From positions 124,001 through 188,000 of the IMG/VR virus record IMGVR_UViG_3300032296_003307: a DNA stretch of 64,000 nucleotides. One strand, given 5' to 3'. The notes beneath the pieces were generated by a model. That model worked only from the letters and a program-made list of their open reading frames with translations. It searched no databases and was not told the DNA's origin. Both the position numbers and the translations under genes were made by a program. This document shows, piece after piece, positions 26,574 through 43,208 of the stretch (its first letter is position 1; each line of letters opens with the position of its first letter).

Positions 26574-26589
26574 ACGATATTTATTGTTT

Positions 26590-26853: not shown

Positions 26854-26860
26854 TCCTCAA

Positions 26861-27052: not shown

Positions 27053-27117
27053 ATCGTTTTTTATTTAATGATATTACATATTTTTTGAATTGTCACGTTA
27101 TTGGATATTTATAGTTT

Positions 27118-28067: not shown

Positions 28068-28069
28068 TT

Positions 28070-28717
28070 ATGAGATTGGACGAACAATTAAATAGAATAA
28101 CAGAAATGATGGAGGACGATAATACCCCATACGCAGTTATTGAAATAACCAAGCCATTATCTTATATGAGTCAAGATTATTATTATCAAGAAGTCCCATA
28201 TTGGAAAACAAAAAAAGATAAGATATACATTAAAAAAGGTCCATCAGGATACAAAACAATATCAACAGACAATATAAAGGTCCTAAAGGTTTTTAAAGAC
28301 GGAGACACTGAAGAATTACAGGATTATTTAAAATCACTCAGAAAGAAAAATAAGTTAAACGAAGTTAATGATGATTGGGGTACAGAAGTCGATGATAAAC
28401 GAAGAAAATCGTACATTAAGATTATTGATAAGTTTATGAAATTAAAATATCCTGGTTTTAATAAAGAGAATGTTGGTGTTTATGAAAATAATGTTGGCAA
28501 TGTTTTATATACCAAATGGTTTGAAGATAAAGGAAGAGCGTTTCTTGAGGATGATAAAAAATTTTATGCTAGATTAGATATGATTAGCCGTGAATTGATA
28601 TTAGAAAGAACAATTTTTGAAGATTTAGAAAAATACTTTGGTGATTTTGTTATGACGTTCGTTATTGATTGGTTTAATCAAGAATTCGGTGAAAATGCCG
28701 AAGGACTAACATTTTAG
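28070..28717 (+). CDS. Leader-bearing two-module protein
   Basis: MRLDEQLNRITEMME; internal KLNE junction. Confidence 0.75.
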   Translation: MRLDEQLNRITEMMEDDNTPYAVIEITKPLSYMSQDYYYQEVPYWKTKKDKIYIKKGPSGYKTISTDNIKVLKVFKDGDTEELQDYLKSLRKKNKLNEVNDDWGTEVDDKRRKSYIKIIDKFMKLKYPGFNKENVGVYENNVGNVLYTKWFEDKGRAFLEDDKKFYARLDMISRELILERTIFEDLEKYFGDFVMTFVIDWFNQEFGENAEGLTF

Positions 28718-28723
28718 AACAAT

Positions 28724-29191
28724 ATGAAATTAATAGAGTCCATAAAAGAAATATTAAAAGAGGAATCTGAACTGAAGACCAAAGTTGAAAATATGGTTAA
28801 AAGCAGAGGAATTGAATTCGCATCAAAAATGCTTGGAGATTTAGATAACGTCATTAAAATTTTGGGTTTAGACATTAATAATGTTGATGTCCAAGAAGAA
28901 CTTGTTAAGAATTTCATTATGTTTTCAAAAGATGTGGACCCTGATATAGATGTTAGTTTTATTAAGGTTTCAAGAATATCAAGAGGAACGGTAATTGCAC
29001 CATTTATTGTTAACGCAAGAGAATATGCTCTTTTTTCAAACGCCGCTAGTCTTTTTGACAGAACAGTTTGTGAACTTATGAATGATTTTTTTCCTTTTAA
29101 AACAGAACCTATATGGGAATTTGATAGAAATAAAAGTAACGATACCAAAATATTTATTAATTCAGTAGAACTAAACGAAGACGATGACTAA
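28724..29191 (+). CDS. Leader-bearing hypothetical protein
   Basis: MKLIESIKEILKEE. Confidence 0.75.
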   Translation: MKLIESIKEILKEESELKTKVENMVKSRGIEFASKMLGDLDNVIKILGLDINNVDVQEELVKNFIMFSKDVDPDIDVSFIKVSRISRGTVIAPFIVNAREYALFSNAASLFDRTVCELMNDFFPFKTEPIWEFDRNKSNDTKIFINSVELNEDDD

Positions 29192-29209
29192 GACCAATAA
29201 AAATTTAAA

Positions 29210-29497
29210 ATGAAAATAATAATAACTGAGTCACAATTAAAATATTTTATTAGACGAAGAGCTAAGTGCATCGAAAATTGGATTGAGAGATTAGAGAATG
29301 GCGATATTATTATGCCATTACTACCAGCCACGTTAAATTGGTCTTCATATAAAATTATATTAATTGCATACGCCCTGACCCATTGTGGTACAAATGTTAC
29401 CAAATATGATGAAGAAAAATTTAATTCGGTTGAAGAAGAATTTGGTGACAGATTATTTAATTGGTACGTAAACGAAAAAAATAGAACAACAAAATAG
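29210..29497 (+). CDS. Leader-bearing small helical protein (IRRR..C family)
   Basis: MKIIITESQLKYFIRRRAKC. Confidence 0.75.
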   Translation: MKIIITESQLKYFIRRRAKCIENWIERLENGDIIMPLLPATLNWSSYKIILIAYALTHCGTNVTKYDEEKFNSVEEEFGDRLFNWYVNEKNRTTK

Positions 29498-29547
29498 TTT
29501 TTTATTTTGGTAATTTTTAATATATTTGCATAATAAATTTAATTATT

Positions 29548-29787
29548 ATGTCAAAACCAATATTTGTCGTTAGATTCCCATATTCAGAAGAAAAAAGAGA
29601 TGTTTATTTGAATTTTGTTAAGCGAATATCCAATCAATTAACCGACTATCACGTTTTAGCTCCTATGGATAACAGTGTCGAGCGTGTTGAATTCGAATGT
29701 TTTAATGTGAAAGATGTGCCCGAAACGGAAATTAATGAAATCAAAGACATGATTTCCAATATGTTGGAAGAAACAAAAAACAAATAA
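29548..29787 (+). CDS. Hypothetical protein
   Basis: 79 aa; TATATTTG box at 29521. Confidence 0.7.
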   Translation: MSKPIFVVRFPYSEEKRDVYLNFVKRISNQLTDYHVLAPMDNSVERVEFECFNVKDVPETEINEIKDMISNMLEETKNK

Positions 29788-29788
29788 T

Positions 29789-29965
29789 ATGTTTTCTATT
29801 TGGTTAAAGGGTACAATTGTGTTTATTTTTGGACTTTGTGTTCATGACACAATAAAAACACGAAAGGAAATTCGAAAAGGTAACGTTCAATGGGTTGCGT
29901 GGAAAGGAAAATATGATTCTGTTTATTTAAAAAAACAAGAACAGTTAAAAACCTCACAAAAGTGA
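29789..29965 (+). CDS. Small membrane protein (58 aa, not in ORF track)
   Basis: MFSIWLKGTIVFIFGLCVHD... read from the sequence. Confidence 0.5.
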   Translation: MFSIWLKGTIVFIFGLCVHDTIKTRKEIRKGNVQWVAWKGKYDSVYLKKQEQLKTSQK

Positions 29966-29996
29966 GGTTTTTTTTTACCGTATATTTATATTGTGT

Positions 29997-30977
29997 ATGA
30001 GAATTATTGATGAATATAAAAAAAGGTTCTTTATATTGTTAGAGTCTGAAATGGGTGATGTAAAACCCATTACCAATGACACTGAAGAATCCGACGCCGA
30101 ATCTGTTGTATCAAAAATTGAGGGTGGTGATTTTGAATCTTTGAATAATATGCCGGTTGACATGGACTTAGCAAAAGAAGTCCTACAAATTCTTTCAACA
30201 GAGGACCCGCAACTTAAAGAAAAACTTAAAAATTACATTCAAAGTCAAACCTCAGAACTATCTGAGGGTATAAATAAAAGGTCACTTTTATATGCTCTTG
30301 GATTTTTATTGTTTAGTTCTGGAGTTGCCGTTGGATACAATATAAAAGGAGATTCATCAAACAAAGAAACGGTAAAAACAGAAGTTAAACCTGAAGGTTC
30401 TGTTTCATTTGAAAACGCCCAAAAAATTGTTAAAATTAAAGAGGGTGGTTATCAAAAAAATCGTACTGATGCGGGTAACTATATAAAAACAAAAAGAGGT
30501 AAAAAATTAATTGGAACCAAATATGGTATTGCCGCACCAACATTACAAAATTGGTTCAGAAAAACTGGTAAAATTTCTAAAAAAGAAACAATAACTAGTG
30601 AAGATATGAAAAATTTGGACTACCAAACCGCAACAGAAATTTTTAAAAATGAGTATTGGGATAAAAATAATTTGGATGTTTTAAACAATCAGTCTTTTGC
30701 AAACTTAATATATGATGGAGTTGTTATTCATGGACCAAATGGAATGGCGGAGGCATTAAATCAGGCTTTGGAAAATCAAGGTCTTGAATCTCCGAGCGGA
30801 TTCTCTAATAAATTTAACGTTATAAATGATTTGGATACGGAAGAGCAAGAAAAACTATTCAATCAGATAAAAAAAGAACGAAACGATATATTATTATCAC
30901 AAAGTAGAGCAGAAAGAAGAGAGTTTGGTGATGGTTGGGATAATAGATTAAACTCTTTTGTGTATTCACCAAATTAA
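29997..30977 (+). CDS. Glycoside hydrolase family 108 lysozyme with leader and hydrophobic segment
   Basis: EGGYQKNRTDAGN...GTKYGI catalytic motif; C-terminal FGDGWDNRL resembling PG_binding_3. Confidence 0.8.
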   Translation: MRIIDEYKKRFFILLESEMGDVKPITNDTEESDAESVVSKIEGGDFESLNNMPVDMDLAKEVLQILSTEDPQLKEKLKNYIQSQTSELSEGINKRSLLYALGFLLFSSGVAVGYNIKGDSSNKETVKTEVKPEGSVSFENAQKIVKIKEGGYQKNRTDAGNYIKTKRGKKLIGTKYGIAAPTLQNWFRKTGKISKKETITSEDMKNLDYQTATEIFKNEYWDKNNLDVLNNQSFANLIYDGVVIHGPNGMAEALNQALENQGLESPSGFSNKFNVINDLDTEEQEKLFNQIKKERNDILLSQSRAERREFGDGWDNRLNSFVYSPN

Positions 30978-31002
30978 ATTTTGATAATAAAAAAATTATT
31001 AT

Positions 31003-31010
31003 TACCTTTG
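31003..31010 (+). promoter_or_regulatory. Bacteroidota-type -7 promoter (TAnnTTTG) with TTG 19 nt upstream (representative)
   Basis: Also at 4013, 12657, 29521, 50016, 51994 and 52623 on +, and upstream of 15767, 50975 and 62484 on -. Confidence 0.8.
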
Positions 31011-31014
31011 TGAC

Positions 31015-31401
31015 ATGGGTTCAGTTATTAGTTATGTAGATTGTCCTAATTGCGGACAAGAGTGTTATGATGATTATTATTATAAGACAAATGAAAGTTA
31101 CGTAAATTGTGGTAATTGTGGATATCATCATTCAGTAACATTATCGGATGTTGAAAAAAATTGGGAGGATATTACTCAGGACGATTATATCATCACTGAA
31201 ATAAAAAACCCTTATGGTTCTTACAAATACAAATATATTGGTGATGTTGCAACCATTTTTGGTAGTTTGGAAAACGAAGAACAGGCTGAAGAATTTAAAA
31301 AAGAGATGATTTCCGAACAAGAAACTATAGAATTTGCTCAAATAAGTAGATATGTTAATGGCGAATTTTCAATAATATCATTAGTTGAATCTACAAAATG
31401 A
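31015..31401 (+). CDS. Zn-ribbon protein
   Basis: CPNCG...CGNCGY; TTG-N19-TACCTTTG promoter. Confidence 0.7.
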   Translation: MGSVISYVDCPNCGQECYDDYYYKTNESYVNCGNCGYHHSVTLSDVEKNWEDITQDDYIITEIKNPYGSYKYKYIGDVATIFGSLENEEQAEEFKKEMISEQETIEFAQISRYVNGEFSIISLVESTK

Positions 31402-31664
31402 GTACCGAAGGTGAATTAAAATTCAGAAGAAGAGTTGAGACGGTTTTTTCCGATATGGTAGATACTTTTTTTGCCGATGGAGAACCGTGTAAATTAAGTC
31501 CTGAAATGTTTACAAGAAAATTAGTGTTTATGGTATTACACGAATATAATCACCATTACCCAGATAATAATTACGATTTTTTTGAATTTAAGGATATGTT
31601 AATGGAGTATTTAGAACCAAAAGCAATTGCGGTTTGGAACAAATACTGTAAGAACAAAAGGTAA
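31398..31664 (+). CDS. Small helical protein (FRRR..PC family)
   Basis: LKFRRR...EPC. Confidence 0.7.
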   Translation: MSTEGELKFRRRVETVFSDMVDTFFADGEPCKLSPEMFTRKLVFMVLHEYNHHYPDNNYDFFEFKDMLMEYLEPKAIAVWNKYCKNKR

Positions 31665-31685
31665 TCAACATACTATTTATAGTTT

Positions 31686-31940
31686 ATGGGAAAAACTATA
31701 AGATTAACAGAGTCTAAATTGGTTGAGTTAATTGAATCTATAATAAAAGAAGACTATTACGATTCAAACAAATTATATAACCGTGAATATATTGTTTTTA
31801 AATTAAAAAACGGACCTAGAGAATTAAGAAAATATATTAAAACTTTACCTGAAATTGAATGTAGAGATAGTCAGGGTAATAAGGCGATATGTACTAAAAT
31901 ACCACAAGTTATTCATGTTTTTTTAACAGGTAACTATTAA
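31686..31940 (+). CDS. Leader-bearing hypothetical protein
   Basis: MGKTIRLTESKLVELIESIIKED. Confidence 0.8.
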   Translation: MGKTIRLTESKLVELIESIIKEDYYDSNKLYNREYIVFKLKNGPRELRKYIKTLPEIECRDSQGNKAICTKIPQVIHVFLTGNY

Positions 31941-31952
31941 CAAAGTTTTATT

Positions 31953-32402
31953 ATGGAATATTCACCACAACAAAAAGATGCGGTTTTTAAATATTGGAAC
32001 AAATTGGGTCCTAATGTTAATGCTGGAAAATATTTTGGTTTGGACGAAAGTACCACAATAGAACTATTACATGAATTTTGGAATTCTGACGGTAAAAATT
32101 TAATGGTTGAATTGATAACGTTTGTAAGAAAAGCGGTTTCAGACTTCAAAGAATGTAATGGTGATGAATTCTCTTTAACCTTTGATTATGTGGTACCATA
32201 TGGTGCCGGTAATTATTATGAAGTTGGTTTTAGATTAAATCTGAATTCACCTGTTTTAGATACTCAAGATTGGGATGATTGGGAAGACCTAAGAACCTTA
32301 TATGGTCAAATAGAAACCTGTGTTGAAGACATGTTAACCCCTCTTACATGGAAAAAACACGGTTTAATCTGTGGTCAGGCAAACATGTTAGAATTTATTT
32401 AA
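31953..32402 (+). CDS. Hypothetical protein
   Basis: 149-aa ORF in the operon. Confidence 0.7.
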   Translation: MEYSPQQKDAVFKYWNKLGPNVNAGKYFGLDESTTIELLHEFWNSDGKNLMVELITFVRKAVSDFKECNGDEFSLTFDYVVPYGAGNYYEVGFRLNLNSPVLDTQDWDDWEDLRTLYGQIETCVEDMLTPLTWKKHGLICGQANMLEFI

Positions 32403-32403
32403 T

Positions 32404-32682
32404 CTACTTACCCATCCCACTCAAAATAACTTCGTAATAATTTTGGTTTGAACAATAAGCATATGCCTGTTCGGACACTTTATTATACATAAAATCTTCC
32501 AAAGTAACCTCGTCACAGTTTGGTCTACCGTTCTTTATTACATATTCTATAACTGAAGTGTGTAGGTCATCTTTGATTCCACTCTCCACAGACTCATCTT
32601 CTAAATTATTTAGGTCCATTTCATTCAAAAGTCCCATTCTTTTCTTTATCTTTGTAATCTCTTCAAAAACATTGTTTCTCAT
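32404..32682 (-). CDS. Leader-bearing hypothetical protein
   Basis: MRNNVFEEITKIKKRMGLLNE. Confidence 0.75.
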   Translation of the reverse strand: MRNNVFEEITKIKKRMGLLNEMDLNNLEDESVESGIKDDLHTSVIEYVIKNGRPNCDEVTLEDFMYNKVSEQAYAYCSNQNYYEVILSGMGK

Positions 32683-32722
32683 AAGATATAAATATCAAAA
32701 TAAAACTATTTATCAATAAATC

Positions 32723-33550
32723 ATGGAAGACCCAATTAAATATCAAACAATACGTGAATCAATCAACTTGAATGATTACGACGCAGAAGATTTTGTTGAA
32801 GTGTTCATTTATGTTTTTAGAGATTGGGTTAAAAAAAATGTACCACAAAAAGAATCTGAATACCCAATATCGTACCTATTCAAAAAATATAAGGACAAAT
32901 TTTGTGAAGATATGGGTATTGAAAAGTATATTACATACAGCCAAAGAGCTTTTCAAACTTTGGGTAGACGATTGGTTGAAAAATCATTATACAAACTTCC
33001 TGATTTTACCCCACAAGAAAAATGGACTTCAAAACCTGTAAATCAAAAAATATTAAATTCTTTGATTGGTAAAATGAATTTACCACCTTACATTACTCTT
33101 AAAATTGATGAAGAAAAAAACTACAATGTTACGATATTACCGACCATAGATTTGTCTGAAAGTCTTAAATCACCCATTAAAAACGAATTTTGGGGTCAAT
33201 CAATACCAACAAAACTAATGGGATTGATTAAAAAATATGGTGCGGTAAAATTAGGTAAATCAACACTAGGTGAATTGGACTTAGAAATATATACACCATC
33301 AATTAACGACAAGGGTTGGGATAAGGAATTTAAAAAATTAAGAAAGGAAACTATAGAACATATTGAATCATTAAAAACCGAATACAGAGGTAAAATTAGA
33401 CAGTTCTTTTTTGGTTTCGAATGGGGTAGACCATGTGTTTATTTGAGATTTAATACTTGGAGATTTCACACCGAAATTATTAGAGAAGTTGAGGGATTTT
33501 TACAAAAAAAGGGTTACAATACCGAAAACTTAATAGTTAGGGAAAAATAA
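32723..33550 (+). CDS. Hypothetical protein
   Basis: 275 aa; TATTTAT upstream. Confidence 0.75.
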   Translation: MEDPIKYQTIRESINLNDYDAEDFVEVFIYVFRDWVKKNVPQKESEYPISYLFKKYKDKFCEDMGIEKYITYSQRAFQTLGRRLVEKSLYKLPDFTPQEKWTSKPVNQKILNSLIGKMNLPPYITLKIDEEKNYNVTILPTIDLSESLKSPIKNEFWGQSIPTKLMGLIKKYGAVKLGKSTLGELDLEIYTPSINDKGWDKEFKKLRKETIEHIESLKTEYRGKIRQFFFGFEWGRPCVYLRFNTWRFHTEIIREVEGFLQKKGYNTENLIVREK

Positions 33551-33577
33551 TAGATTTACTTGGTATATTTATAACAT

Positions 33578-34423
33578 ATGTCAAGGACAATCATTTTATC
33601 ACAAAAAAATTTATCATCTATTGTCAGTAGATTAATGTCTGAACAATTAAATGAGATTAAAAAAGACGTTAACCAAAAACTTTGGAACGTTTATAGAATT
33701 CCGTCAAATATAGGCGCCAATGGGTACACAATATCCTCTAATTTTGATGAGACAAATGTTCTTAATTCTATCATAGCATTTTCTAAAAATAAGTGGAAAG
33801 AAGGAAATACCGTTGTTTCTACTGAAGATGAAGATGGTTCAGGGTACCTATTCAAATATATAATATACCTAATCAATAAAACCGTTAAAGACAATCCAAG
33901 AATTGCTAGTACAAAAATGAGATTCACTCAAGAAATTGCTAATAATTTTGGACCTGTTGAAAAAGTAAATGATGAACCTCTTACAAAAGCCGACGCCGAA
34001 ATGTTAAAAAGGAATGAGGCTAAAAGAGATATAAATTCATTCAAAAGAAAAGGTGCTGCAATATTTAGGGAATTTGAAAAGGCGGGTATCGACAAAAAGT
34101 CTTTATCAAAACTAACAAAAAACTTCCAAGAAACAATTTTTGATTTGTTTAAGTGGGATGAGTTACAATATTATGCAGAAGACGATGGGTTATTGTTATA
34201 CCACAAAGGAGCGTTTGAAAAACTTATGGACACAAATCTTCCCGATTCATTAAAGGCGGATTTAGAGTCAGTAGAAAATAATCCCGAAAACGCCATAGAC
34301 CCAGAGACAGGTAAAAAGTTCCCTTATAAATTAAAAATGATTCCAAAGGACTCTAAAATTTATAGAACCATTACCGGTATTTCAGGTTTTGCTCCCAAAA
34401 AAATTATTAAACAAAAGTTTTGA
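33578..34423 (+). CDS. Leader-bearing hypothetical protein
   Basis: MSRTIILSQKNLSSIVSRLMSEQ. Confidence 0.75.
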   Translation: MSRTIILSQKNLSSIVSRLMSEQLNEIKKDVNQKLWNVYRIPSNIGANGYTISSNFDETNVLNSIIAFSKNKWKEGNTVVSTEDEDGSGYLFKYIIYLINKTVKDNPRIASTKMRFTQEIANNFGPVEKVNDEPLTKADAEMLKRNEAKRDINSFKRKGAAIFREFEKAGIDKKSLSKLTKNFQETIFDLFKWDELQYYAEDDGLLLYHKGAFEKLMDTNLPDSLKADLESVENNPENAIDPETGKKFPYKLKMIPKDSKIYRTITGISGFAPKKIIKQKF

Positions 34424-34465
34424 TTTTGGGTCTAATTACATTATTTTTGAATAAAATTAAAAATC

Positions 34466-34606
34466 ATGTTGGGGTCCTTAATTACAATATTTTTATTTAT
34501 TCTGATTTACAGTTATGTAAGTTGGACACTTCCTTTACAAAATTTTAAAAACAAGAGTTTTTCAGAAAAAAAAGAAGTCGTTAAAAAACTAAAAGATATG
34601 GATTAA
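34466..34606 (+). CDS. Small single-TM protein (46 aa, not in ORF track)
   Basis: MLGSLITIFLFILIYSYVSW... read from the sequence. Confidence 0.5.
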   Translation: MLGSLITIFLFILIYSYVSWTLPLQNFKNKSFSEKKEVVKKLKDMD

Positions 34607-34639
34607 AATTTAATCTATAACTTAGGTATTTATAGATAT

Positions 34640-35206
34640 ATGAAGATTATAATCAAAGAATCTCAATTACCACTTTTATTAGAAAACCTTCAATTTGAAG
34701 AGGTGTATAAAAAAACATACCCGAAGATTTTTAATGCGGTATGTATGAGATATGCTAAAGGTGATTATGATTTGGCGTCAGAATATTGTCAATTAGGGTT
34801 TATTCAAGTTTATAAAAATTTAGATAAGTACGATAATTTAGGTAGTTTAGAAGGTTGGGTTAGAAGAGTTGTTACAAATATTATAATTAACGAATTGAGG
34901 TCACAAAAAAGAAAATTGGACACTGTTCCTGATTTTGAAGTGGATTTAGAAAAATTAGACCTTTCGCAAGAACCAGAAAGTTTTGAAGAAATTTCTTACA
35001 TGGGTAAATACCCCGAAAGTTTAATTAGAGCGGCGGTTAATTCTTTACCTGACGGATACAAATATGTTTTCTACAATTATTATTTTGGTGATAAAAGTCA
35101 TAAAGAAATTGCGGATGATTTGGGTATTAAAGAAATTACGTCACGCACCCAATTACACAAAGCCAAAAATTTAATTAAAAACTACTTGGAAAAACATTCA
35201 AAATGA
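34640..35206 (+). CDS. ECF-type sigma-70 factor with N-terminal leader
   Basis: Region 2: FEEVY...A.E..QLGFIQVYKNLDKY...LEGWVRRVVTN..IN.LR. Region 4: LPDGY..VF...SHKEIA..LGI...TSRTQLHKAK. Confidence 0.9.
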   Translation: MKIIIKESQLPLLLENLQFEEVYKKTYPKIFNAVCMRYAKGDYDLASEYCQLGFIQVYKNLDKYDNLGSLEGWVRRVVTNIIINELRSQKRKLDTVPDFEVDLEKLDLSQEPESFEEISYMGKYPESLIRAAVNSLPDGYKYVFYNYYFGDKSHKEIADDLGIKEITSRTQLHKAKNLIKNYLEKHSK

Positions 35207-35298
35207 ACAAAATAATAATATTCATATTGTCTTTAATACCTGGTAGAATTATATGGTTATTTATCCCAAAGGATAAAAACGACAGTTGGTTAATGTAA
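35203..35298 (+). CDS. 31-aa hydrophobic peptide coupled to the sigma gene
   Basis: ATGA overlap; MNKIIIFILSLIPGRIIWLFIPKDKNDSWLM. Confidence 0.4.
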   Translation: MNKIIIFILSLIPGRIIWLFIPKDKNDSWLM

Positions 35299-36276
35299 TT
35301 ACAAACCAAACCTTCCTTTTTGGGCTTTGTAGTTTTGAAGTACTTCAACAGAAGAGAGAGCTCGGTTATAAATTAAACCTATAGCTATATTACCATTTAA
35401 CAATTGACTAGAACCTCCAAAAAACCCTCCACAACCTAATTGTGCCTCTACATTATTATTTAAAAATTTTGTAGTTGTTGTTAAAACTGCTGAACCGTTT
35501 AAATAAACTATAGTATTATTTGAAGGAGTACCTGTGTTTGTGGTAAAAGTCATAGCTACATTTTTCCAAGTTCCGTCGGCAATATTAATTCCTGTACTTC
35601 TAGTTCCCCCACCACCCCAATCATAAGTAACTAATACACTATTTTCTGTAAACAATGCGTAGTTATTCTGTTTTGTTATAATTCCCCTAAAGCTAGAACC
35701 AGGAGACGATGTTTTGACCCATGCTGATATTGTTCCTTGATTTATTTGTAAACTAGAATTATTACCGCAACTAACATAATCATCGGCACCATCAAATACA
35801 ATTGAACCACCATTAGATGAGTTAAATGTTGGTCCATTCACTAATCCCCCATTATTGTTATTTCCGCTCAAATCATACCAAGCGGTTGCAGTGGTTGGAT
35901 ATGACGGAGTAAAACCGGCGTCCAAATTTAGAACCAAACCATTCGTTACTATTCCTTCATATTCTCTGTTTACACAAAACTTATCTGTTTGAGTTACATA
36001 ATAAGTTAAACATTGTGCCGATGTAGTATATGAAGTTCCTGCAATCTTATTTGTAATTGAAACCAATTCACTTTGATTGGATGCCCTATAAATCGCGGGT
36101 CCGTTTGACTCCTTATTTAAATATATTGTAAACCCTCCAGATACAGGGTTATATGATGTGTAATATCCTGTGGTTGAAGTTGGTCCTTTACCATCATTTA
36201 TTGGACCCAACCAAAAATTACCAATTTTAAGTGCGTTCGTTTGAGCGTTGGTACTGTATTTTATATAATTTGCCAT
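35299..36276 (-). CDS. LamG/concanavalin-A-like virion surface protein
   Basis: GLVLNLDAG..SYP...WYDLSGNNNNG.L.NG...FDGADDYV...TISAWVK...W.NVAMT...YLNG...YNRALS; start reassigned after TATTTATA. Confidence 0.85.
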   Translation of the reverse strand: MANYIKYSTNAQTNALKIGNFWLGPINDGKGPTSTTGYYTSYNPVSGGFTIYLNKESNGPAIYRASNQSELVSITNKIAGTSYTTSAQCLTYYVTQTDKFCVNREYEGIVTNGLVLNLDAGFTPSYPTTATAWYDLSGNNNNGGLVNGPTFNSSNGGSIVFDGADDYVSCGNNSSLQINQGTISAWVKTSSPGSSFRGIITKQNNYALFTENSVLVTYDWGGGGTRSTGINIADGTWKNVAMTFTTNTGTPSNNTIVYLNGSAVLTTTTKFLNNNVEAQLGCGGFFGGSSQLLNGNIAIGLIYNRALSSVEVLQNYKAQKGRFGL

Positions 36277-36328
36277 TTGATTATAAATAGTAGTGTGGTA
36301 ATTTACATGTAATGTATATTTATAAACA

Positions 36329-36730
36329 ATGAAGATAATATTATCAGAAACCCAACTTTCAAAACTTATTAAGTTATTAAAGGAGGAAATTGACCTTCCA
36401 GAATCTCCTGCAAGAAGGGTGTATAATATCCTTATGGAAAAAGGATATTTAAATGAAAATTCAGAAGTAAATGTTGGAACAGACACATTAGAAATTTATT
36501 CTTTACCGTATCCCGCACCTGAAGAATACTTTACCGATTATGACGGATATCTTATAATAGTTGTACCTTATCTTTTTGAAGACGAAGGTGGAACTGAAAT
36601 ACAATTTGAAGATGAAAATACTAAAGAATCTAGTCAAGCACGTTTTGAAGTTAAGGACTATATTGCTTCTACATGGGACTTGGATTTTCCAATTGATTTT
36701 GACGATGATTATCTATCTTTTTCTATTTAA
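36329..36730 (+). CDS. Leader-bearing acidic protein
   Basis: MKIILSETQLSKLIKLLKEE. Confidence 0.75.
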   Translation: MKIILSETQLSKLIKLLKEEIDLPESPARRVYNILMEKGYLNENSEVNVGTDTLEIYSLPYPAPEEYFTDYDGYLIIVVPYLFEDEGGTEIQFEDENTKESSQARFEVKDYIASTWDLDFPIDFDDDYLSFSI

Positions 36731-36795
36731 AATTTTCTTCTAAAATAATATCATTAGAACAATTTTTTTATTGTTTTTCCTATATTTATCAGGGT

Positions 36796-37344
36796 ATGAA
36801 ACCCTTTATAATAACCGAAGAAGAAAAAAACAAAATTTTACATCAACACATCGAAGCCACAAGTAGGCAATACCTACCTGAATCAAAGCATGAAACCGAA
36901 GAAATCTATACAATGAGGGATAAAAAAACTCCCTCAACAGGATATAGTGATATGGACATGAAAGACTTTGATGAGTTTGAACATGATTTGGGTTTCGACG
37001 CACCATCAATAGTAGATATTAAAAGGTTAAAAAAACTTGACAAAAGTGCCGTTAAAAACATGTTCAAGAAAAGACCAAAATTCACAGGTAGTGAGGTTGA
37101 ATTGGACGAGGAAATGGATAGTTATTCCATTCCACAAATGAAACGAGACCTAATAGATGCCACTGGCATATCCCAAGAAGAATTGGACTTAATATTAGCC
37201 GGTGATGAAGATGCTTTAGAAGAGGCGAAAGTAACTTATGGTTATACAGACGAAGGTAGAGTTAGATTTGGTATTTTGGACAAGTTGGACGCTTTGTTTG
37301 ATGCTTACAACCCACCAAGTTATATTGAAGACGACGATTATTAA
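36796..37344 (+). CDS. Leader-bearing acidic protein
   Basis: MKPFIITEEEKNKILHQH. Confidence 0.75.
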   Translation: MKPFIITEEEKNKILHQHIEATSRQYLPESKHETEEIYTMRDKKTPSTGYSDMDMKDFDEFEHDLGFDAPSIVDIKRLKKLDKSAVKNMFKKRPKFTGSEVELDEEMDSYSIPQMKRDLIDATGISQEELDLILAGDEDALEEAKVTYGYTDEGRVRFGILDKLDALFDAYNPPSYIEDDDY

Positions 37345-38186
37345 TCTAAACGGTCTCTAAAGTAGGATATGAAATTATTTTTTACACTGTACTCAAAACT
37401 GCCGGCATCCCAATCCCAACCATGACCCTCAAGAGGACGACATCCAACTAGATATCTCCAACCAATATTTTCTCGTGTTTTTAATGATAGGTATTTACCC
37501 AAATCTATCTTATCGGCAAATTCATCGGCAAATGGTGTTCCATTATTTATGGACCTTTCATTAAAATAACATATTATGGCATCAAAAAATTCTCTCTTTT
37601 CATACCCAAACTCATTGCAAAAATCATCAACCATTTCATCATCAATTAGAACTTTATCTCCATTACCTTTTATGTAATTTAAACTTTCAAATGTTATCGG
37701 AAAGAAAAATTCAATGTCTTCGTTATCAACATATTCCTCAGATTCCATGTTTGAGTAATTTATAGAATATGGTACTCCATAGGACCTCATTTCTCCTTTT
37801 TTGTTTTTACCAACATATTTTTTCAAATACTTTTTGGTTTCTTCACTCATAATTATAGAACGAGCGGTCAAATCAATTTTTCCGTACTTAAATTTAAAAT
37901 CAATCCTAAATTCTTTTCCTTGTAAAGGATGGTAGTCAGGAAACATAAAACGAAACATTTTATTGAGGGTGTCATAAATCTCATACTGCAATATTTTTTT
38001 TGTAAAATAAGGTATTTGTGGAGTTCCTGTAATTTCTACATAACAATCATATAGTTTAGAATACGCGCCAGCATTTTCATTTTTAGGTAAATATTCTAAT
38101 TTGTAAGATAGATTTAATCCGAAAACTTTGCTTTTCAGATTATTTAACATTTTCTCTATAAGATTGGTTTGAACATTTATATCCAT
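37341..38186 (-). CDS. Hypothetical protein (LIEKMLN family)
   Basis: 281-aa ORF. Confidence 0.7.
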   Translation of the reverse strand: MDINVQTNLIEKMLNNLKSKVFGLNLSYKLEYLPKNENAGAYSKLYDCYVEITGTPQIPYFTKKILQYEIYDTLNKMFRFMFPDYHPLQGKEFRIDFKFKYGKIDLTARSIIMSEETKKYLKKYVGKNKKGEMRSYGVPYSINYSNMESEEYVDNEDIEFFFPITFESLNYIKGNGDKVLIDDEMVDDFCNEFGYEKREFFDAIICYFNERSINNGTPFADEFADKIDLGKYLSLKTRENIGWRYLVGCRPLEGHGWDWDAGSFEYSVKNNFISYFRDRLD

Positions 38187-38204
38187 GACAGTATTTATAT
38201 AAAT

Positions 38205-38534
38205 ATGAAAAACAGGACAATTATTCTCAGAGAATCCGAACTTGTCAATGTTATTGAAAGGTTAGTTAAGGAAGAAGACATGATGGAATTCATGGACTAT
38301 GACGACGCCGACCCAATTGAGGTTATGAGAATTAACAAGGAAAATTTGAAAAGTAAGAAGTTGACATTTTATGAATATGAAATCAACGATGCCGGTTATT
38401 TAATTTTATTTGATGAGATTAGAAATGTGTCGATAGAAGTTTATGATGGTGAATTTGTTGATAGTGATAATTTCGAAATTATCTATAAACCAATGAATCA
38501 ATATGCTAAAGAAGTATTTTCAGAGATAATATGA
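38205..38534 (+). CDS. Leader-bearing acidic protein
   Basis: MKNRTIILRESELVNVIERLVKEE. Confidence 0.75.
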   Translation: MKNRTIILRESELVNVIERLVKEEDMMEFMDYDDADPIEVMRINKENLKSKKLTFYEYEINDAGYLILFDEIRNVSIEVYDGEFVDSDNFEIIYKPMNQYAKEVFSEII

Positions 38535-38869
38535 GAAAAGTAATAAAATTAACCGAGTCGGATTTAAGAAGAATCGTTAGACGTGTAATCGCCGAGCAAG
38601 GAAGGTCAGGAACAAATCCTGAGGTGTTAGACGCAATTAAATCTATGAATTTTGCCAAAGAATATTGTGTTAGAGCAAGTGATAAGGGTGATATTGAATT
38701 GTCATATGACTATTGTAATAAGACTTATCCGCATATCATGATTTCATACCCAACAGAAGGGTTGGAATTATTGGATATAAAAACACCTAAAATAATTAAA
38801 ACATGGGAATTCTTCTCAGAAGAAGACATACCTGATTTAGAACAAACCGTAAAAAATGTAGTAAAATGA
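38531..38869 (+). CDS. Leader-bearing hypothetical protein
   Basis: MRKVIKLTESDLRRIVRRVIAEQ. Confidence 0.8.
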   Translation: MRKVIKLTESDLRRIVRRVIAEQGRSGTNPEVLDAIKSMNFAKEYCVRASDKGDIELSYDYCNKTYPHIMISYPTEGLELLDIKTPKIIKTWEFFSEEDIPDLEQTVKNVVK

Positions 38870-39273
38870 ACAGAAGAATAATTTTAAACGAAGATGAAAG
38901 GTCAAAAATTCTTTCAATGCACAGAAATGAAATAAAGAAAATGTTTATTCGTGAAGACGATGACATAAGTGATGATGACTTCATGGATGATGATACACCT
39001 GAAGAAATGGTTACAGATTTAACCGTAGAAAAATTTGGACCATTAGTTTCTGTGGAAGGTAATGGTGAAAAATTCATGGGTAGTGAAATGGATGGAGGAT
39101 GGGAATTCTACAATAATGAAGACGTTATTGTTACAATGGACGAAATGTGTTCGGCTCTTGGTTGTAGCATGGAACAACTTAAAGACACCCTAGGAATTGA
39201 TGACGAATCTGAAGAGATTGATGATGTTGTTATGTCCAAATCGGATGATGATGAGATTGACTTAGGATTTTAA
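38866..39273 (+). CDS. Leader-bearing highly acidic protein
   Basis: MNRRIILNEDERSKILSMH...FIRED. Confidence 0.75.
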   Translation: MNRRIILNEDERSKILSMHRNEIKKMFIREDDDISDDDFMDDDTPEEMVTDLTVEKFGPLVSVEGNGEKFMGSEMDGGWEFYNNEDVIVTMDEMCSALGCSMEQLKDTLGIDDESEEIDDVVMSKSDDDEIDLGF

Positions 39274-39295
39274 AGTACATATACAAAAAATTTAG

Positions 39296-39323
39296 AACCC
39301 CAATTTAAACGTTGGGGTTTTTT
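39296..39323 (+). terminator. Intrinsic terminator
   Basis: AACCCC/GGGGTT followed by a T tract. Confidence 0.7.
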
Positions 39324-39352
39324 ATTTCTATTTGCTTGTATTTATTATCAGT

Positions 39353-42300
39353 ATGGCATGTTGTAAATATCAATTTTTATCAAATAGACTGTTTCCGGTT
39401 ACGGTTAATTGGACCGCTTGTGACGGACAAAAAAAATCTACAATTTTAAGAAGAAATCGTCCAATAACCGTTTGGGCAATTTGTGGAACCGCACAACCTA
39501 GCAGATTTGCCACATTAATTTTAGAGTGTAAATGTGTTGGACTTAAAATTGAAAAGCAACCAATAGTAACATCAGGTAGGACCACTTTTGTTCAATTTAC
39601 AGATTGTTATGGAAACCTACAAAAAAAGGAATTGACCGATAGTTCTCCTGTAATAAACGAGTGTGGTTGTAGAGGAACCACAGCTAGTGCAGATATATAT
39701 AGTGTTAGTGAATTTGGTGATTGTTCTAAAGGAGGATTGATTATACCAACCCCTACACCAACAAAAACTTCAACATTAACACCCACATTAACCAAAACAC
39801 CAACCTCAACACCAACTCCAACAAAAACAAAAACCCCAACTCCAACTCCAACAAACACAAGTACAACAACACCATCAAATAGTCCACAAAGTACACCATG
39901 TTTAAGTTTTAGTTTGACACCAAGTAATAGTGCAACACCTAGCACAACACCATCAACAACACCGACAACAACTCCTACGGTAACAACAACAACTTCACCA
40001 ACACCGACTAAGACTGCAACACCATCACCAACTGCGTGTGAGTGTAAGATTTACCAATTCAGAGTCAGACAAACTGATTTAAACAGTGCCACAGGGAATA
40101 CACAATCGTGGATTAATAAAACAGTATTCGGGTTCATGGGTAACTGTGCACCAACTTGCAATCCTGACCATTGGCAATCAACAGGGTTTGTCGTTCCTGA
40201 TGGTTATATTGGTTCAACCGCAACATCAGATATTATCTATGAATGGTGTCAACCATTAACAAAATTACAACAAGACGATAATAACGGATTTGTTACACCA
40301 CCTTACATTTATTTTTACTACTATCAAAATGGTGTTAAAATAACAGGTATATCTACAACTTATACTGCAACCACAGAATGTTGTACCGAACCTGTAGTTT
40401 ATGGTGGTAATAGACAAGGAATTTATTCTTTGACTGAAGAGGGAGGGGCTCCTTCTACACCATCGACAGGACAAATAGAATTTTTTAACTCCGGTGTAAC
40501 ATATAACATTGGTGAAATTACAGGATTTTCATTTACATTGGTAGATGCGTTGGACCAAAATGTTGGTCAACCAAATGACGGTACAGGAAATTGTTATTCA
40601 GTAACCAACCTATCAAACGGAGGTGGGTCAATTTATTTTACACAGAGCGGTGTAACTTTTGGGTTTAGCGGAACCTCCTCAAGTTTTGTGAGTAACGCAA
40701 CAGGGTTTAGTGGTTCTAATTTGACATTAATTCAATCAGGAGGAACATCTTTCTTTTCAGGATTATCCGTAAATATGACATTTAACGTTAATCCTTACCC
40801 AACAGTAACACCAACAAGTAACCCAACTGTAACACCAACCAAAACACCGACCAAAACACCAACACCAACAGTTACACCAACTTATACCGTTACAAGTACA
40901 CCTACTGAAACCGCAACCAACACACCAACACCATCTGTAACACCAAGTCCAACAGAAACTTATTATTGTAGACAATGTCCATCGGGCACAACATGGAATG
41001 GTACTTATTGTGTTGGTAACATATTTTCATCAACATCTGCAACTACTGCATATTCGGCCTTTACCTTTACCTCAGGTTCCACATTAGCGGCGTTTGGTCG
41101 TTGGGGCACCATTTTTTACGAAGATATAAGTGGATATACCTTACCATTAACTTTTTATAACGGTGATTACCCGACAGGGGGTATTATTGCGTATTCAGGT
41201 TCAAATACAACAATATTTAACGGATTACGAGACTCATCAACATTTATAAATTCTTTCACATCCATCGCTTCGGGTAATTTTGATTCTAATTCTGGCGGTA
41301 CTGAAGTACAACGACAAATAGTCGTTAATAATGGTAATGCTCCGACATCACAATTATGGTCAAGTCTTAATAATTCCGATTACGGAAGAATTAATCAGGC
41401 CGGTGTACAAAACGCCGCAGGATTTTTGACAAATGAATGGTGGGGTTATTATGTTTGTGTTGAATTGACCGCAACAACACAATTACATCTATTAATTGGT
41501 GGTGATGACCTTTATAGATTAAGAATGAATGAAAATTTTATAATCTATAAAAATGGTGCAAATCCGCCATCGGTAACTCTTAATGGTGTGACTTATGCAA
41601 ATGCTGGTAGATATGCCATCACAAATGCTGCGGGTCAAAACATTAGCTTTTTTAATCAAATTTGTTTACCTATAACGTTGACCGCAGGAACTTATATATT
41701 CCAACCCGAGTTTATGGATACAGGAGTTCAATATACTACAGGAGTATTTGAAATATACTCAGGAGTATCAACATCAACATTAACAGGTCTTACAACAAAT
41801 ACACAACTATCACCATATATTTTACATTCTTCAGAAAATTTAAGAGGTCAAACAGTTAGCATGATTAAATATTCAGGAAATACTTTTGGTATTTTCTGTC
41901 CACCTAACTATACACTTGGTTTTAGTTCTTGTACACCATATTGTGTTTATGGAAATACAATACAACAACCCTGTCCTACTGTTACACCATCAACCACACC
42001 TTCAAATACACCTACTACGACTCAAACACAAACACCAACACCAACTGAAACTCCAACCTTAACACCAACACCAACGGAAACTTTAGGTATAGAAGGATAT
42101 GTTGCACAACCATGTTGTGGTGGTGGACAAATAGAAATAAATATTCAAGGTAACGGCACATTTTTAGGGCAGTCTTTTTCGTTGGCTAATCAATGTTGGA
42201 CTATTATTTTACCGCTGGGTACATCGGTAGTTGGTCCAACTATAAATGCAACATATTTGTTTGAGTCTGGTTGTACACAATGTTTTGATAGTACTTATGA

Positions 42301-43198: not shown

Positions 43199-43208
43199 AA
43201 AATATTAA

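What the first reader, a model, noticed from the sequence alone, without database searches (positions are those of the whole stretch)
34466..35298. ECF sigma factor with a cargo leader, flanked by two tiny membrane ORFs
Seen: a clear sigma region 2 and region 4 protein starting MKIIIKESQLPLLLEN behind TATTTAT, with an ATGA-coupled 31-aa hydrophobic ORF downstream and a 46-aa TM ORF upstream. Inference: a sigma factor made late, packaged and injected to redirect host RNA polymerase immediately on infection. The peptide could be a minimal anti-sigma factor.
Basis: partly seen in the sequence, partly recalled or inferred. Interest (0 to 1): 0.66.

Follow-up and report, generated by a model that had tools for sequence, protein, structure and literature searches.

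The report
Phage sigma factor with portable leader
An uncultivated freshwater jumbo phage encodes a genuine ECF-type sigma factor whose first 15-18 residues are a portable tag shared with dozens of unrelated phage proteins; the tag looks like a T4-style capsid-loading propeptide, so the sigma may be delivered with the DNA, but that is untested.

Summary
Window 34640-35206 encodes a 188-aa ECF-type sigma factor. It lies 6 nt behind TATTTAT, has a 31-aa hydrophobic ORF overlapping its stop codon (ATGA) and a 46-aa TM ORF upstream.

The N-terminal MKIIIKESQLPLLLE lies outside the ECF model, which is fully covered by residues 19-183. It is a portable module:
- 28 of about 378 ORFs in the 268.7-kb genome start with it (0.12 expected by chance).
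- A profile of it finds 1,602 protein clusters in metagenomes, mostly at residue 1 and sometimes in 2-3 copies per protein.
- Sigma homologs carry whichever version their own phage lineage uses, or none.

The module carries two [IL]-x-E motifs, the cleavage signature of T4 gp21. The genome has T4-like head genes with two gp21-family (Peptidase_S77) proteases. The sigma's promoter element also heads structural operons.

I therefore favour a T4 capsid-targeting-sequence analogue (about 0.4). Packaging, cleavage and injection remain untested, and a cytoplasmic docking or regulatory tag is nearly as likely.

The 31-aa ORF is a real, conserved gene (10 synonymous against 1 non-synonymous codon change). 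Nothing shows it is an anti-sigma factor.

Which factor reads TATTTAT is unresolved, because a second, divergent sigma-like protein also exists.

The parts
34466..34606 (+). 46-aa ORF with an N-terminal TM helix and a charged C-terminal tail. It follows the 281-aa leader-bearing gene 33578-34423 and has no promoter element of its own.
   Evidence: Conserved in L022 (6 synonymous and 6 non-synonymous codon changes, the non-synonymous ones all conservative and within the TM part) and in L023 (1 synonymous change). Absent upstream of sigma in L024 and L002. No family hit.
34627..34633 (+). Phage promoter element TATTTAT (class P1), 6 nt upstream of the sigma ATG. It predicts a leaderless or nearly leaderless mRNA.
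   Evidence: Conserved in L022 and L023 and before the sigma homologs of L002, L003, L005 and L024.
34640..34693 (+). Leader module of the sigma factor (residues 1-18, MKIIIKESQLPLLLENLQ). It has [IL]-x-E motifs at residues 5-7 (IKE, 34652-34660) and 13-15 (LLE, 34676-34684).
   Evidence: Outside the TIGR02937 match. AF2 pLDDT 51-63, not packed on sigma2. Shared with at least 28 ORFs. Swapped or absent in sigma homologs.
34694..34912 (+). Sigma domain 2 (residues 19-91; three helices at 19-37, 43-63 and 70-91).
   Evidence: Pfam PF04542, AF2 pLDDT about 90, PDB ECF sigma matches.
34913..35014 (+). Acidic, disordered sigma2-sigma4 linker (residues 92-125). There is no sigma3 domain.
   Evidence: AF2 pLDDT below 50 for residues 93-121. 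Variable in alignment A1.
35015..35206 (+). Sigma domain 4 (residues 126-186, helix-turn-helix), followed by the stop codon.
   Evidence: Pfam PF08281, AF2 pLDDT about 91.
35203..35298 (+). 31-aa membrane micro-protein MNKIIIFILSLIPGRIIWLFIPKDKNDSWLM. Its start overlaps the sigma stop (ATGA). Its own stop abuts the stop of the convergent Laminin_G_3 gene.
   Evidence: Conserved in L022 (10 synonymous, 1 non-synonymous), L023 (11 and 4) and L024 (35 aa, where sigma is only 58% identical). The other frames are closed. Absent after sigma in L002-L006.
6920..60359 (.). Cluster of genes whose products begin with the same leader module (MKIII[TS]ESQL.., MKK[VI][VI][KR]LTESDL..[IV]VK, M.KRFIITEEEK..). 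Starts on the + strand: 8034, 17426, 18105, 18850, 19391, 19790, 20578, 21029, 21412, 21763, 22569, 23898, 25587, 25895, 29210, 31686, 33578, 34640, 36329, 36796, 38205, 38531, 38866, 47865, 48252, 58947. Starts on the - strand: 7240, 12557, 60356.
   Evidence: Apart from sigma, none has a Pfam or PHROG family above threshold.

Best explanation
Shown: the gene encodes a phage ECF-type (group 4) sigma factor made of sigma2, a linker and sigma4. It lies directly behind the phage's own single-element promoter (a/g)TATTTAT, placed so that transcription should start at or next to the ATG.

Shown: residues 1-15/18 are not part of the sigma fold. They are one copy of a portable module of about 15-25 residues, a short hydrophobic strand followed by an amphipathic helix. 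The module heads dozens of otherwise unrelated small proteins of this phage and more than 1,600 protein clusters of related uncultivated phages.

Inferred, most likely mechanism: the module works like the T4 capsid-targeting sequence.
1. It docks the protein to the scaffolding core of the T4-like prohead.
2. The gp21-family prohead protease cuts after its [IL]-x-E motifs. In sigma these are after E7 and E15, which leaves an intact ECF domain starting about residue 16.
3. The mature sigma travels in the head and enters the next host with the DNA.
4. There it can redirect the Bacteroidota RNA polymerase before any phage gene is expressed.

Shown: the downstream 31-aa gene is a conserved membrane micro-protein, apparently translationally coupled to sigma. 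Its role is open.
For: Sigma identity.

Leader lies outside the fold:
- TIGR02937 is fully covered by residues 19-183.
- AF2 gives the leader low confidence and does not pack it on sigma2.
- Cellular ECF relatives and some phage homologs (P0035-37) lack it.
- P0017 carries the other variant (RLTESDL), and P0006 carries the MIKL.. form used by its own neighbours.

Module is real and widespread:
- 28 N-terminal against 3 internal matches, 0.12 expected.
- N-terminal 28-mers resemble each other about ten times more often than internal ones, 174 against 18 pairs.
- 1,602 cluster representatives at E <= 0.001, with 133 of the best 150 starting within residues 1-7.

T4-like machinery:
- gp23-like major head protein, portal and TerL.
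- Two Peptidase_S77 (gp21-family) proteases.

Cleavage signature:
- I/L-x-E at leader positions about 5-9.
- A second [ILV]-x-E directly after the module in 20 of 28 cases, 4.2 expected.
- In T4, gp21 cuts after L/I-X-E. The internal proteins share only a 10-19-residue N-terminal targeting sequence, and Alt loses a 7-residue N-terminal propeptide (PMC9026906; PMC3012670).

Other support:
- Multi-copy, polyprotein-like relatives make sense if each copy is a cleavage and docking unit.
- The same promoter element precedes head and tail operons (24045 before TerL and portal, 30654 before protease, scaffold and major head protein, 49416 before sheath) and the sigma and leader genes.
- Sigma is not among the genes with host-type TAnnTTTG promoters.
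Against: - There is no virion proteome, isolate or transcript data.
- The module is not strictly N-terminal. Relatives carry internal and C-terminal copies, some without a Met.
- Looser leader classes sit on enzymes that are unusual as capsid cargo: PPK2, a P-loop kinase, NT5C.
- 28 to about 60 leader proteins (7-15% of ORFs) is a large cargo set.
- [IL]-x-E is short, and its recurrence is partly inherited with the module, so the statistics are not independent.
- TATTTAT also precedes small genes in the replication region, so it is not a purely late signal.
- A second sigma-like protein could be the factor that reads it.
- The sigma keeps a region 4, but TATTTAT promoters show no -35 element.
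Confidence: 0.4

Rival explanations
1. The module is a cytoplasmic docking or regulatory tag, not a capsid signal. A common partner would bind the strand-helix unit. Candidates are an assembly hub, a phage compartment, the phage-encoded Lon-like protease or GroEL, or the membrane. This would localise, assemble or time the turnover of many phage proteins. Sigma would act only in the cell that makes it, as a middle or late sigma.
For: Internal and multiple copies per protein suit an avidity or docking motif. Looser leader classes head metabolic enzymes: PPK2, a kinase, NT5C and GH108. The genome encodes a Lon-like ATP-dependent protease behind a host-type (early-looking) promoter, and a GroEL. 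The helix is amphipathic and cationic. The known phage sigmas phiEco32 gp36 and 7-11 gp47 are made and used inside the infected cell (PMC8948821).
Against: It does not explain the doubled [IL]-x-E signature at the module boundary. It does not explain why the leader genes form a variable ORFan cluster like the T4 internal-protein loci. No partner has been identified.
Confidence: 0.33
2. The conserved N-terminus reflects nucleic-acid constraints rather than protein function. Transcription starts at the ATG, so the first codons are the initially transcribed and translated region of leaderless mRNAs and are selected for initiation efficiency.
For: Both promoter classes lie 4-6 nt from the ATG. In Flavobacterium the -7 box spans -12 to -5, and leaderless mRNAs are only 5.5% of the total (PMC9723704). 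The first residues (MK, then I/V runs) are A/T-rich codons.
Against: Conservation is at the amino-acid level, with synonymous and conservative replacements over about 23 residues. The same module follows 15-17-nt 5' UTRs in L031 and L032. It also occurs inside proteins, sometimes without a Met.
Confidence: 0.05
3. The N-terminal stretch is simply the sigma factor's own first helix, the region-1.2-like helix of ECF sigmas. Its likeness to other proteins would then be coincidental.
For: MAFFT and the A1 profile place ESQLPLLLE opposite the N-terminal helix of cellular ECF sigmas such as AlgU (TQEQDQQLVERV). AF2 predicts a short helix at residues 7-14.
Against: The complete TIGR02937 model is satisfied by residues 19-183. 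The helix is of low confidence. The same 14-residue string heads at least 8 unrelated proteins of this genome. Homologs swap it for another variant or lack it.
Confidence: 0.05
4. The 31-aa membrane peptide is a minimal anti-sigma factor that holds the sigma at the membrane until a signal releases it. This claim can be true alongside any reading of the leader.
For: It occupies the classical anti-sigma position: immediately downstream, on the same strand, with start and stop overlapping, and single-pass TM. It is under purifying selection and is retained where sigma is only 58% identical.
Against: It has no anti-sigma domain and no family hit. Only about 3-8 N-terminal and about 10 C-terminal residues lie outside the membrane. 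It is absent after sigma in L002-L006, where sigma is followed by other genes or carries a C-terminal extension.
Confidence: 0.12

Closest known systems
T4 capsid-targeting sequences (CTS) of internal proteins IPI-III and Alt, processed by prohead protease gp21
   Same: A short N-terminal peptide is the only thing shared by otherwise diverse small proteins. L/I-x-E motifs are present. The phage has a gp23-like head and gp21-family (Peptidase_S77) proteases. T4 Alt shows that an injected protein can reprogram host RNA polymerase (PMC9026906, PMC3012670).
   Different: The sequence is unrelated to the T4 CTS. The module is longer (about 23 residues in the LTESDL form) and has two candidate cleavage motifs. 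It can be internal or repeated within one protein. There are far more bearers (28-60 per genome). The cargo would include a sigma factor, which I have not seen reported as capsid cargo. Packaging has not been demonstrated.
phiEco32 gp36 and Salmonella phage 7-11 gp47 (phage-encoded sigma factors using host core RNA polymerase)
   Same: A small phage sigma of the sigma-70/ECF type. phiEco32 gp36 reads a single-element promoter (tAATGTAtA) with the start site 6-8 bp downstream, much like the geometry of TATTTAT here (PMC8948821).
   Different: gp36 lacks region 4, while this sigma keeps it. gp36 is a middle-gene product made and used within one infection. Neither protein has a shared leader. The promoter assignment here rests on co-occurrence only.
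ECF sigma factors of crAss-like phages and of Bacteroidota (TIGR02985-like, SigW-like)
   Same: These are the nearest sequence relatives. crAss-like phage sigmas are 24-30% identical, Bacteroidales ECF sigmas up to 38%. The domain layout is the same.
   Different: Those alignments start at residue 19-22, so they lack the leader. No AAC/CGT-type ECF promoter is enriched here, and there is no classical anti-sigma partner.
T4 gp55 late sigma (for the second, 247-aa sigma-like protein of this genome)
   Same: The phage backbone is T4-like. Promoters have a -10-type element only. The fold resembles 7d7c chain F (Z 9.5) and sigmaE region 2 (Z 9.6, rmsd 2.2 A over 91 residues).
   Different: No significant sequence match. 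The Z values lie in the range where helical bundles can match by chance. The protein has an extra C-terminal helical domain.

Membership tests
ECF (group 4) sigma-70 family sigma factor | Sigma2 domain (regions 2.1-2.4) | tested here: met
   PF04542, 42.5 bits against 24. AF2 helices 19-91 at pLDDT about 90.
ECF (group 4) sigma-70 family sigma factor | Sigma4 domain with helix-turn-helix | tested here: met
   PF08281, 42.8 bits against 25.7. AF2 helices 126-186.
ECF (group 4) sigma-70 family sigma factor | No region 1.1 or sigma3; whole-protein match to the ECF model | tested here: met
   188 aa. TIGR02937, 81.8 bits against 42.9, model positions 3-165 of 165. Disordered linker 92-121. Best PDB hits are all ECF sigmas.
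ECF (group 4) sigma-70 family sigma factor | Co-transcribed cognate anti-sigma factor with an anti-sigma domain (common, not universal) | tested here: not met
   The downstream ORF is only 31 aa and has no family hit.
ECF (group 4) sigma-70 family sigma factor | Bipartite AAC / CGT-type promoters, including its own | tested here: not met
   AAC-N15-18-CGT is not enriched upstream of genes (8 observed against 10.9 in random sequence). Its own promoter is TATTTAT with no -35 signal. A related lineage uses CCGTATATTTA.
T4-type capsid-targeting propeptide | A short N-terminal peptide shared by otherwise unrelated proteins of one phage | tested here: met
T4-type capsid-targeting propeptide | Ends in a prohead-protease site (L/I-x-E in T4) | tested here: met
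   The motif is present twice per module. The second site occurs in 20 of 28 cases against 4.2 expected. This shows sequence compatibility only.
T4-type capsid-targeting propeptide | The phage encodes a gp21-family prohead protease and a T4-like head | tested here: met
   PF03420 at G000 31270-31872 (E 1.8e-29) and 233341-234051 (E 2e-23). gp23-like major head protein, portal and TerL.
T4-type capsid-targeting propeptide | Strictly N-terminal location | tested here: not met
   Internal and C-terminal copies in P0127-P0134, P0164 and P0245. Within this genome there are 28 N-terminal against 3 internal matches.
T4-type capsid-targeting propeptide | Bearers are found processed in the virion and are ejected | not testable with these tools
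   No isolate phage carries the module, and no proteome is available.
Class I anti-sigma factor (for the 31-aa ORF) | N-terminal cytoplasmic anti-sigma domain of about 80 aa followed by a TM helix | tested here: not met
   31 aa in all, with 3 residues before the TM stretch.
T4 gp55-like late sigma (for the 247-aa protein) | Sigma2-like fold that binds core RNA polymerase | tested here: inconclusive
   TIGR02937, 21.6 bits, below threshold. VIA Z 9.5-9.8 to sigmaE region 2 and to gp55. No PHROG or PDB sequence hit.

The most novel reading that the evidence does not exclude
A clade of abundant, uncultivated freshwater jumbo T4-like phages of Bacteroidota uses a previously undescribed, widespread module (more than 1,600 protein clusters) for capsid loading and proteolytic processing. 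The module packs a large and fast-evolving cargo into the head. The cargo includes an ECF sigma factor, so a ready-made promoter-specificity subunit would be injected with the genome. That would solve the bootstrapping problem of a phage whose candidate sigma genes both lie behind phage-specific promoters.
Probability: 0.25. Interest if true: 0.85.

Novelty: new variant of a known kind. Interest (0 to 1): 0.65.

Why it matters
Injected proteins that reprogram host transcription are known, for example T4 Alt and the virion RNA polymerases of N4, crAss-like and phiKZ-like phages. To my knowledge an injected sigma factor is not.

If the module is a capsid-loading signal, it gives a sequence handle for finding the ejected proteins of a large group of uncultivated phages. 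Those proteins are likely anti-defence and takeover effectors. It could also serve as a portable tag for loading foreign proteins into such capsids.

Even if the module is a cytoplasmic docking tag, it is a large unannotated family (1,602 clusters, no Pfam, PHROG or NCBIfam model) that marks 7-15% of a jumbo-phage proteome.

The promoter architecture is also unusual for Bacteroidota: two classes, both placed for leaderless mRNAs. It can be tested directly by 5'-end mapping.

Tried and rejected
- Megablast of 10 kb against isolate phages found no match.
- The search for related loci with sigma in viral contigs found none.
- Literature searches for the motif strings found nothing relevant.
- Pfam, PHROGs and NCBIfam on about 20 leader proteins and both small ORFs gave no family apart from sigma.
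- Complex prediction of sigma with the 31-aa peptide returned 'no answer' (score 0.00, controls not run). This is evidence neither for nor against binding.
- The protein-atlas search on the peptide and on one leader protein returned nothing usable.
- tblastn of a leader against 50,697 isolate phage records gave only a chance-level hit.
- Sequencing runs show the DNA in freshwater and lake metagenomes of at least 11 studies. The two 'RNA-Seq' runs are probably DNA and exist only as contigs, so there is no information on expression or start sites.
- The record behind L002 (201 kb) could not be searched.
- A canonical ECF AAC-N-CGT promoter is not enriched.
- A third bipartite motif, TTGG-N19-TA[CT]A, was considered as the ECF regulon. 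I rejected that link because Flavobacterium phage immuto, which lacks the sigma, also has it.
- Microcystis phage Mel-JY01, the only isolate with a homolog of the 247-aa sigma-like protein, uses SD-type leaders and shows no TATTTAT enrichment. It could not settle who reads TATTTAT.
- I rejected the leaderless-mRNA explanation of the leader, and the idea that the leader is the sigma's own first helix. Reasons are given under the rival explanations.
Full report
WHAT IS THERE

The window is bases 124001-188000 of a 268,739-bp IMG/VR virus record (GC 32%, CheckV 100%). Three ORFs lie at the reported place:
- 34466-34606: 46 aa, with an N-terminal TM helix.
- 34640-35206: 188 aa, starting MKIIIKESQLPLLLEN.
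- 35203-35298: 31 aa and hydrophobic. Its ATG overlaps the upstream TGA as ATGA.

TATTTAT lies at 34627-34633, 6 nt before the 188-aa ORF.

The 188-aa protein is an ECF-type sigma factor:
- Pfam Sigma70_r2 (residues 33-91) and Sigma70_r4_2 (128-176), both above their cut-offs.
- NCBIfam TIGR02937 sigma70-ECF at 81.8 bits (cut-off 42.9). Residues 19-183 cover model positions 3-165 of 165.
- A family profile hits solved ECF sigmas (AlgU, SigH, SigW, sigmaE) at E about 1e-26 to 1e-22.
- The AF2 model has a three-helix sigma2 (19-91), a disordered linker (92-121) and sigma4 (126-186). Its 27 best listed Foldseek hits are ECF sigma chains.

THE LEADER IS A PORTABLE MODULE, NOT PART OF THE SIGMA FOLD

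Residues 1-18 lie outside the ECF model. AF2 gives them pLDDT 51-63, with a short helix at 7-14 that is not packed on sigma2.

The same string heads many other ORFs:
- MKIII[TSKA]ESQL.. in at least 8 proteins.
- MKK[VI][VI][KR]LTESDL..[IV]VK[RK]V[IL].E in about 12.
- M.KRFIITEEEK..I in about 6.

A pattern for the module matches 28 N-termini and only 3 internal positions among 378 ORFs, with 0.12 N-terminal matches expected from the internal rate. All but one lie at genome 131-184 kb, inside the window.

In an unbiased comparison, N-terminal 28-mers resemble each other far more often than internal 28-mers. There are 174 against 18 pairs at score 35 or more, and 86 against 7 at score 45 or more. 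Looser classes also appear: MNLQE.I.RIKEMMGL..E, MNLQESIRRILREE and MK.SEL..IIKEE.

Apart from sigma, the class A proteins tested (20 across) have no Pfam or PHROG family above threshold.

EVIDENCE FROM RELATIVES

About 37 metagenomic sigma homologs (44-97% identity) keep the leader. The exceptions are informative:
- P0017 (locus L036) starts, from its internal ATG, with MGRTIRLTESDL. That is the other variant, and the gene just upstream carries it too.
- P0006 (L034) starts MIKLIKLIES, like three neighbouring genes that begin MIKLKD../MIKLTS...
- P0035-37 (L035, a 43% GC lineage) have no leader, and no other protein on that contig has one.
- Cellular ECF sigmas (38% identity or less) and crAss-like phage sigmas (24-30%) align only from about residue 19.

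The sigma's N-terminus therefore follows the form used by its own phage lineage. That is the behaviour expected of a tag read by a co-evolving partner.

A profile of 37 leaders, searched against 1.84 billion representative proteins, finds 1,602 clusters at E <= 0.001. In 133 of the best 150 the match starts within residues 1-7. Several longer proteins carry two or three copies, including internal and C-terminal ones and some without a Met. They look like polyproteins in which cargo units are separated by the module. Almost none of 67 hits has a Pfam domain. The only family matches were single ones, among them LysM, OmpA, GNAT and a tRNA-synthetase fragment.

On a 311-kb contig the same module follows 5' UTRs of 15-17 nt. 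It is therefore not a by-product of leaderless mRNAs. No isolate phage carries it, and I found no paper that mentions it.

WHY A T4-STYLE CAPSID-TARGETING PROPEPTIDE IS THE LEADING MECHANISM

The phage has a T4-like morphogenesis backbone:
- A gp23-like major head protein, 53% identical to that of Flavobacterium phage vB_FspM_immuto.
- Portal, TerL and tail sheath.
- Two Peptidase_S77 (T4 gp21-family) prohead proteases.

In T4, gp21 cuts after L/I-X-E. The internal proteins share only a 10-19-residue N-terminal capsid-targeting sequence that docks them to the scaffolding core and is then removed. Alt loses a 7-residue N-terminal propeptide, is ejected, and modifies host RNA polymerase (PMC9026906; PMC3012670).

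Here the module carries an I/L-x-E at positions about 5-9. In 20 of 28 cases a second [ILV]-x-E follows directly after it (4.2 expected; the cases are not independent, because the module is inherited).

In sigma the motifs are IKE (5-7) and LLE (13-15). A cut after E15 would leave a protein starting three residues before the ECF model begins.

The leader genes are small (median 128 aa), acidic, poorly conserved ORFans. Many sit behind their own promoter, some of them preceded by a terminator hairpin, and others follow the preceding gene directly. This resembles the variable internal-protein loci of T-even phages.

These points show compatibility, not proof.

PROMOTERS AND TIMING

(a/g)TATTTAT occurs 233 times. 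Of these, 76 copies lie 3-10 nt (mostly 5) upstream of an ATG that opens an ORF of at least 35 aa. No -35 element is conserved. It precedes three groups of genes:
- Head and tail operons: before TerL and portal, before protease, scaffold and major head protein, and before the sheath.
- The leader genes and sigma.
- Some small genes in the replication region.

A second class of about 13-15 genes has a canonical Bacteroidota promoter, TTG-N17-22-TAnnTTTG, 4-5 nt from the ATG. These genes include the RNA ligase, a Lon-like protease and a phosphoesterase. In Flavobacterium psychrophilum this -7 box spans -12 to -5, and only 5.5% of mRNAs are leaderless (PMC9723704). Both phage classes are therefore placed for leaderless transcripts.

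A third, bipartite class, TTGG-N19-TA[CT]A, precedes about 25 genes at 2.9-117 kb, DNA polymerase among them. Phage immuto, which lacks the sigma, also has it, so it is not tied to the sigma.

Contigs that carry a sigma homolog also carry TATTTAT-type promoters, or CCGTATATTTA in L035. The first 50 kb of immuto show no such enrichment. This links the sigma to the promoter only by co-occurrence.

The genome also encodes a second, very conserved sigma-like protein:
- 247 aa, at G000 245426-246169 on the minus strand.
- More than 7,900 metagenomic homologs, the best 120 of them at 74% identity or more.
- One homolog lies on the same 201-kb contig as a sigma homolog.
- TIGR02937 scores 21.6 bits, below threshold.
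- VIA Z is 9.5-9.8 to sigmaE region 2 and to T4 gp55.

Which of the two factors reads TATTTAT is unresolved. phiEco32 gp36 shows that a phage sigma can use a single-element promoter. However, gp36 lacks region 4, and this sigma keeps it (PMC8948821). Neither candidate has a host-type promoter. The ECF sigma gene lies directly behind TATTTAT, and the 247-aa gene lies in a minus-strand gene run headed by one. Delivery of one of them with the virion would be a tidy solution, but this is an argument and not evidence.

THE SMALL ORFs

The 31-aa ORF is a real gene.
- Against the 90%-identical relative L022 it shows 10 synonymous and 1 non-synonymous codon change. Against L023 it shows 11 and 4.
- The other frames are closed.
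- In L024, where sigma is only 58% identical, it persists as a 35-aa ORF overlapping the sigma stop. The shared motif is LSLIPG.IIW.F.PK.K.DSWLM.
- It is absent after sigma in L002-L006.
- It has no anti-sigma domain and no family match. The complex prediction gave no verdict.

The 46-aa ORF is conserved only in the two closest relatives. Its changes are conservative and confined to the TM segment. It belongs to the upstream transcription unit.

CAVEATS

- The record carries two divergent head modules: TerL 27% identical, major head protein about 44% over the C-terminal half. Promoter classes are also distributed asymmetrically between left and right. A chimeric assembly cannot be excluded.
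- The sigma, the leader cluster, the second sigma-like gene and the second head module all lie in the right part. The sigma and the 247-aa gene co-occur on a relative's 201-kb contig. The local conclusions therefore do not depend on this question.

Noticed in passing
G000 25078-34976 and 228247-237947 (outside the window; loci L008, L009, L019): The 268.7-kb record has two complete but divergent head and packaging sets: TerL, portal, Peptidase_S77 protease, scaffold-like protein and gp23-like major head protein. TerL is 27% identical between sets, and the major head protein about 44% over its C-terminal half. This is either one jumbo phage with two head modules or a chimeric assembly.
   Followed up: partly
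L030:1357-2100 (-) = G000 245426-246169: A 247-aa protein with a sigma2-like fold (VIA Z 9.5-9.8 to sigmaE region 2 and to T4 gp55). It scores below threshold on TIGR02937 and has no PHROG or PDB sequence hit. It has more than 7,900 metagenomic homologs, the best 120 of them at 74% identity or more. It is a candidate gp55-like late sigma and a core gene of an abundant freshwater phage clade.
   Followed up: partly
whole window, e.g. 3660, 7287, 17426, 19790, 36329, 39353, 46408, 53799: The promoter-like element (a/g)TATTTAT lies 4-6 nt before the ATG of about 60-76 genes genome-wide, with no -35 element. In divergent gene pairs two opposed copies share intergenic regions of 30-55 bp. This predicts leaderless mRNAs on a scale unusual for Bacteroidota.
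   Followed up: partly
window 4026, 15767(-), 31015, 50028, 50975(-), 52008, 52635: About 13-15 genes genome-wide have a canonical Bacteroidota promoter (TTG-N17-22-TAnnTTTG) only 4-5 nt from the ATG. Among them are the RNA ligase at 52635 and a phosphoesterase. These look like host-sigmaA early genes, also leaderless. They point to a Bacteroidota host.
   Followed up: partly
G000 2896-117105 (L007-L015): A third, bipartite motif, TTGG-N19-TA[CT]Att, lies about 8-30 nt before about 25 genes. These include DNA polymerase, a gene at 89018 that I read as clamp-loader-like from its N-terminal sequence only, and glycosyltransferases. It occurs only in the left 117 kb of the record and is also present in Flavobacterium phage immuto.
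   Followed up: partly
window 7287, 8616, 9136, 9888, 10741, 11289, 11746, 27702, 28070, 32682(-), 53799: Further N-terminal leader classes (MNLQE.I.RIKEMMGL..E and MNLQESIRRILREE..). A Pfam scan of the 59 leader-bearing proteins found PPK2, a P-loop kinase domain and NT5C in one member each. I attribute PPK2 to the 53799 gene and the kinase to the 9136 gene by inference from PHROG hits. Two proteins share MK.I.DYKKRF..L.ES.MGDV.P (24783 and 29997, the latter with a GH108 lysozyme domain).
   Followed up: partly
window 39353-43198, 43209-44150, 46408-47853: Three neighbouring proteins (1281, 313 and 481 aa) share a Cys-containing N-terminal domain (..C..F...N......V.W..CDG....). They have no family assignment, and homologs lie next to sigma in the 201-kb relative. 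They may be structural or receptor-binding paralogs.
   Followed up: no
window 35299-36276 (-): A Laminin_G_3 (concanavalin-like lectin) protein runs convergent to sigma. The 395-aa GTG ORF is probably a 325-aa protein starting at the ATG at 36276, which has its own TATTTAT. Its stop codon abuts the stop of the 31-aa ORF, which leaves no room for a terminator.
   Followed up: partly
window 19735-19775 and 22520-22555: Near-identical G+C-rich hairpins (..CCCCC.TCTTTAAGTTGGGGGTTTTTT) are followed at once by TATTTAT and a leader gene. They look like repeated terminator-promoter cassettes.
   Followed up: no
proteins P0127-P0134, P0164, P0245; loci L031, L032: Metagenomic proteins of 200-750 aa carry 2-3 copies of the leader module, at the N-terminus, internally and at the C-terminus. 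One lies on a 311-kb contig. They look like polyproteins of leader-plus-cargo units.
   Followed up: partly
locus L035 (sigma homolog P0037, 43% GC): A different phage lineage has a leaderless-type sigma homolog and a sharply conserved element (g)aCCGTATATTTA 3-8 nt before at least 8 genes. By my recollection it contains the SigW-type CGTATA -10 core; I did not check this against a source.
   Followed up: partly
window 32600-37400: Near-identical DNA is present in freshwater and lake metagenomes from at least 11 independent studies, so the phage is widespread. No RNA evidence was found.
   Followed up: partly
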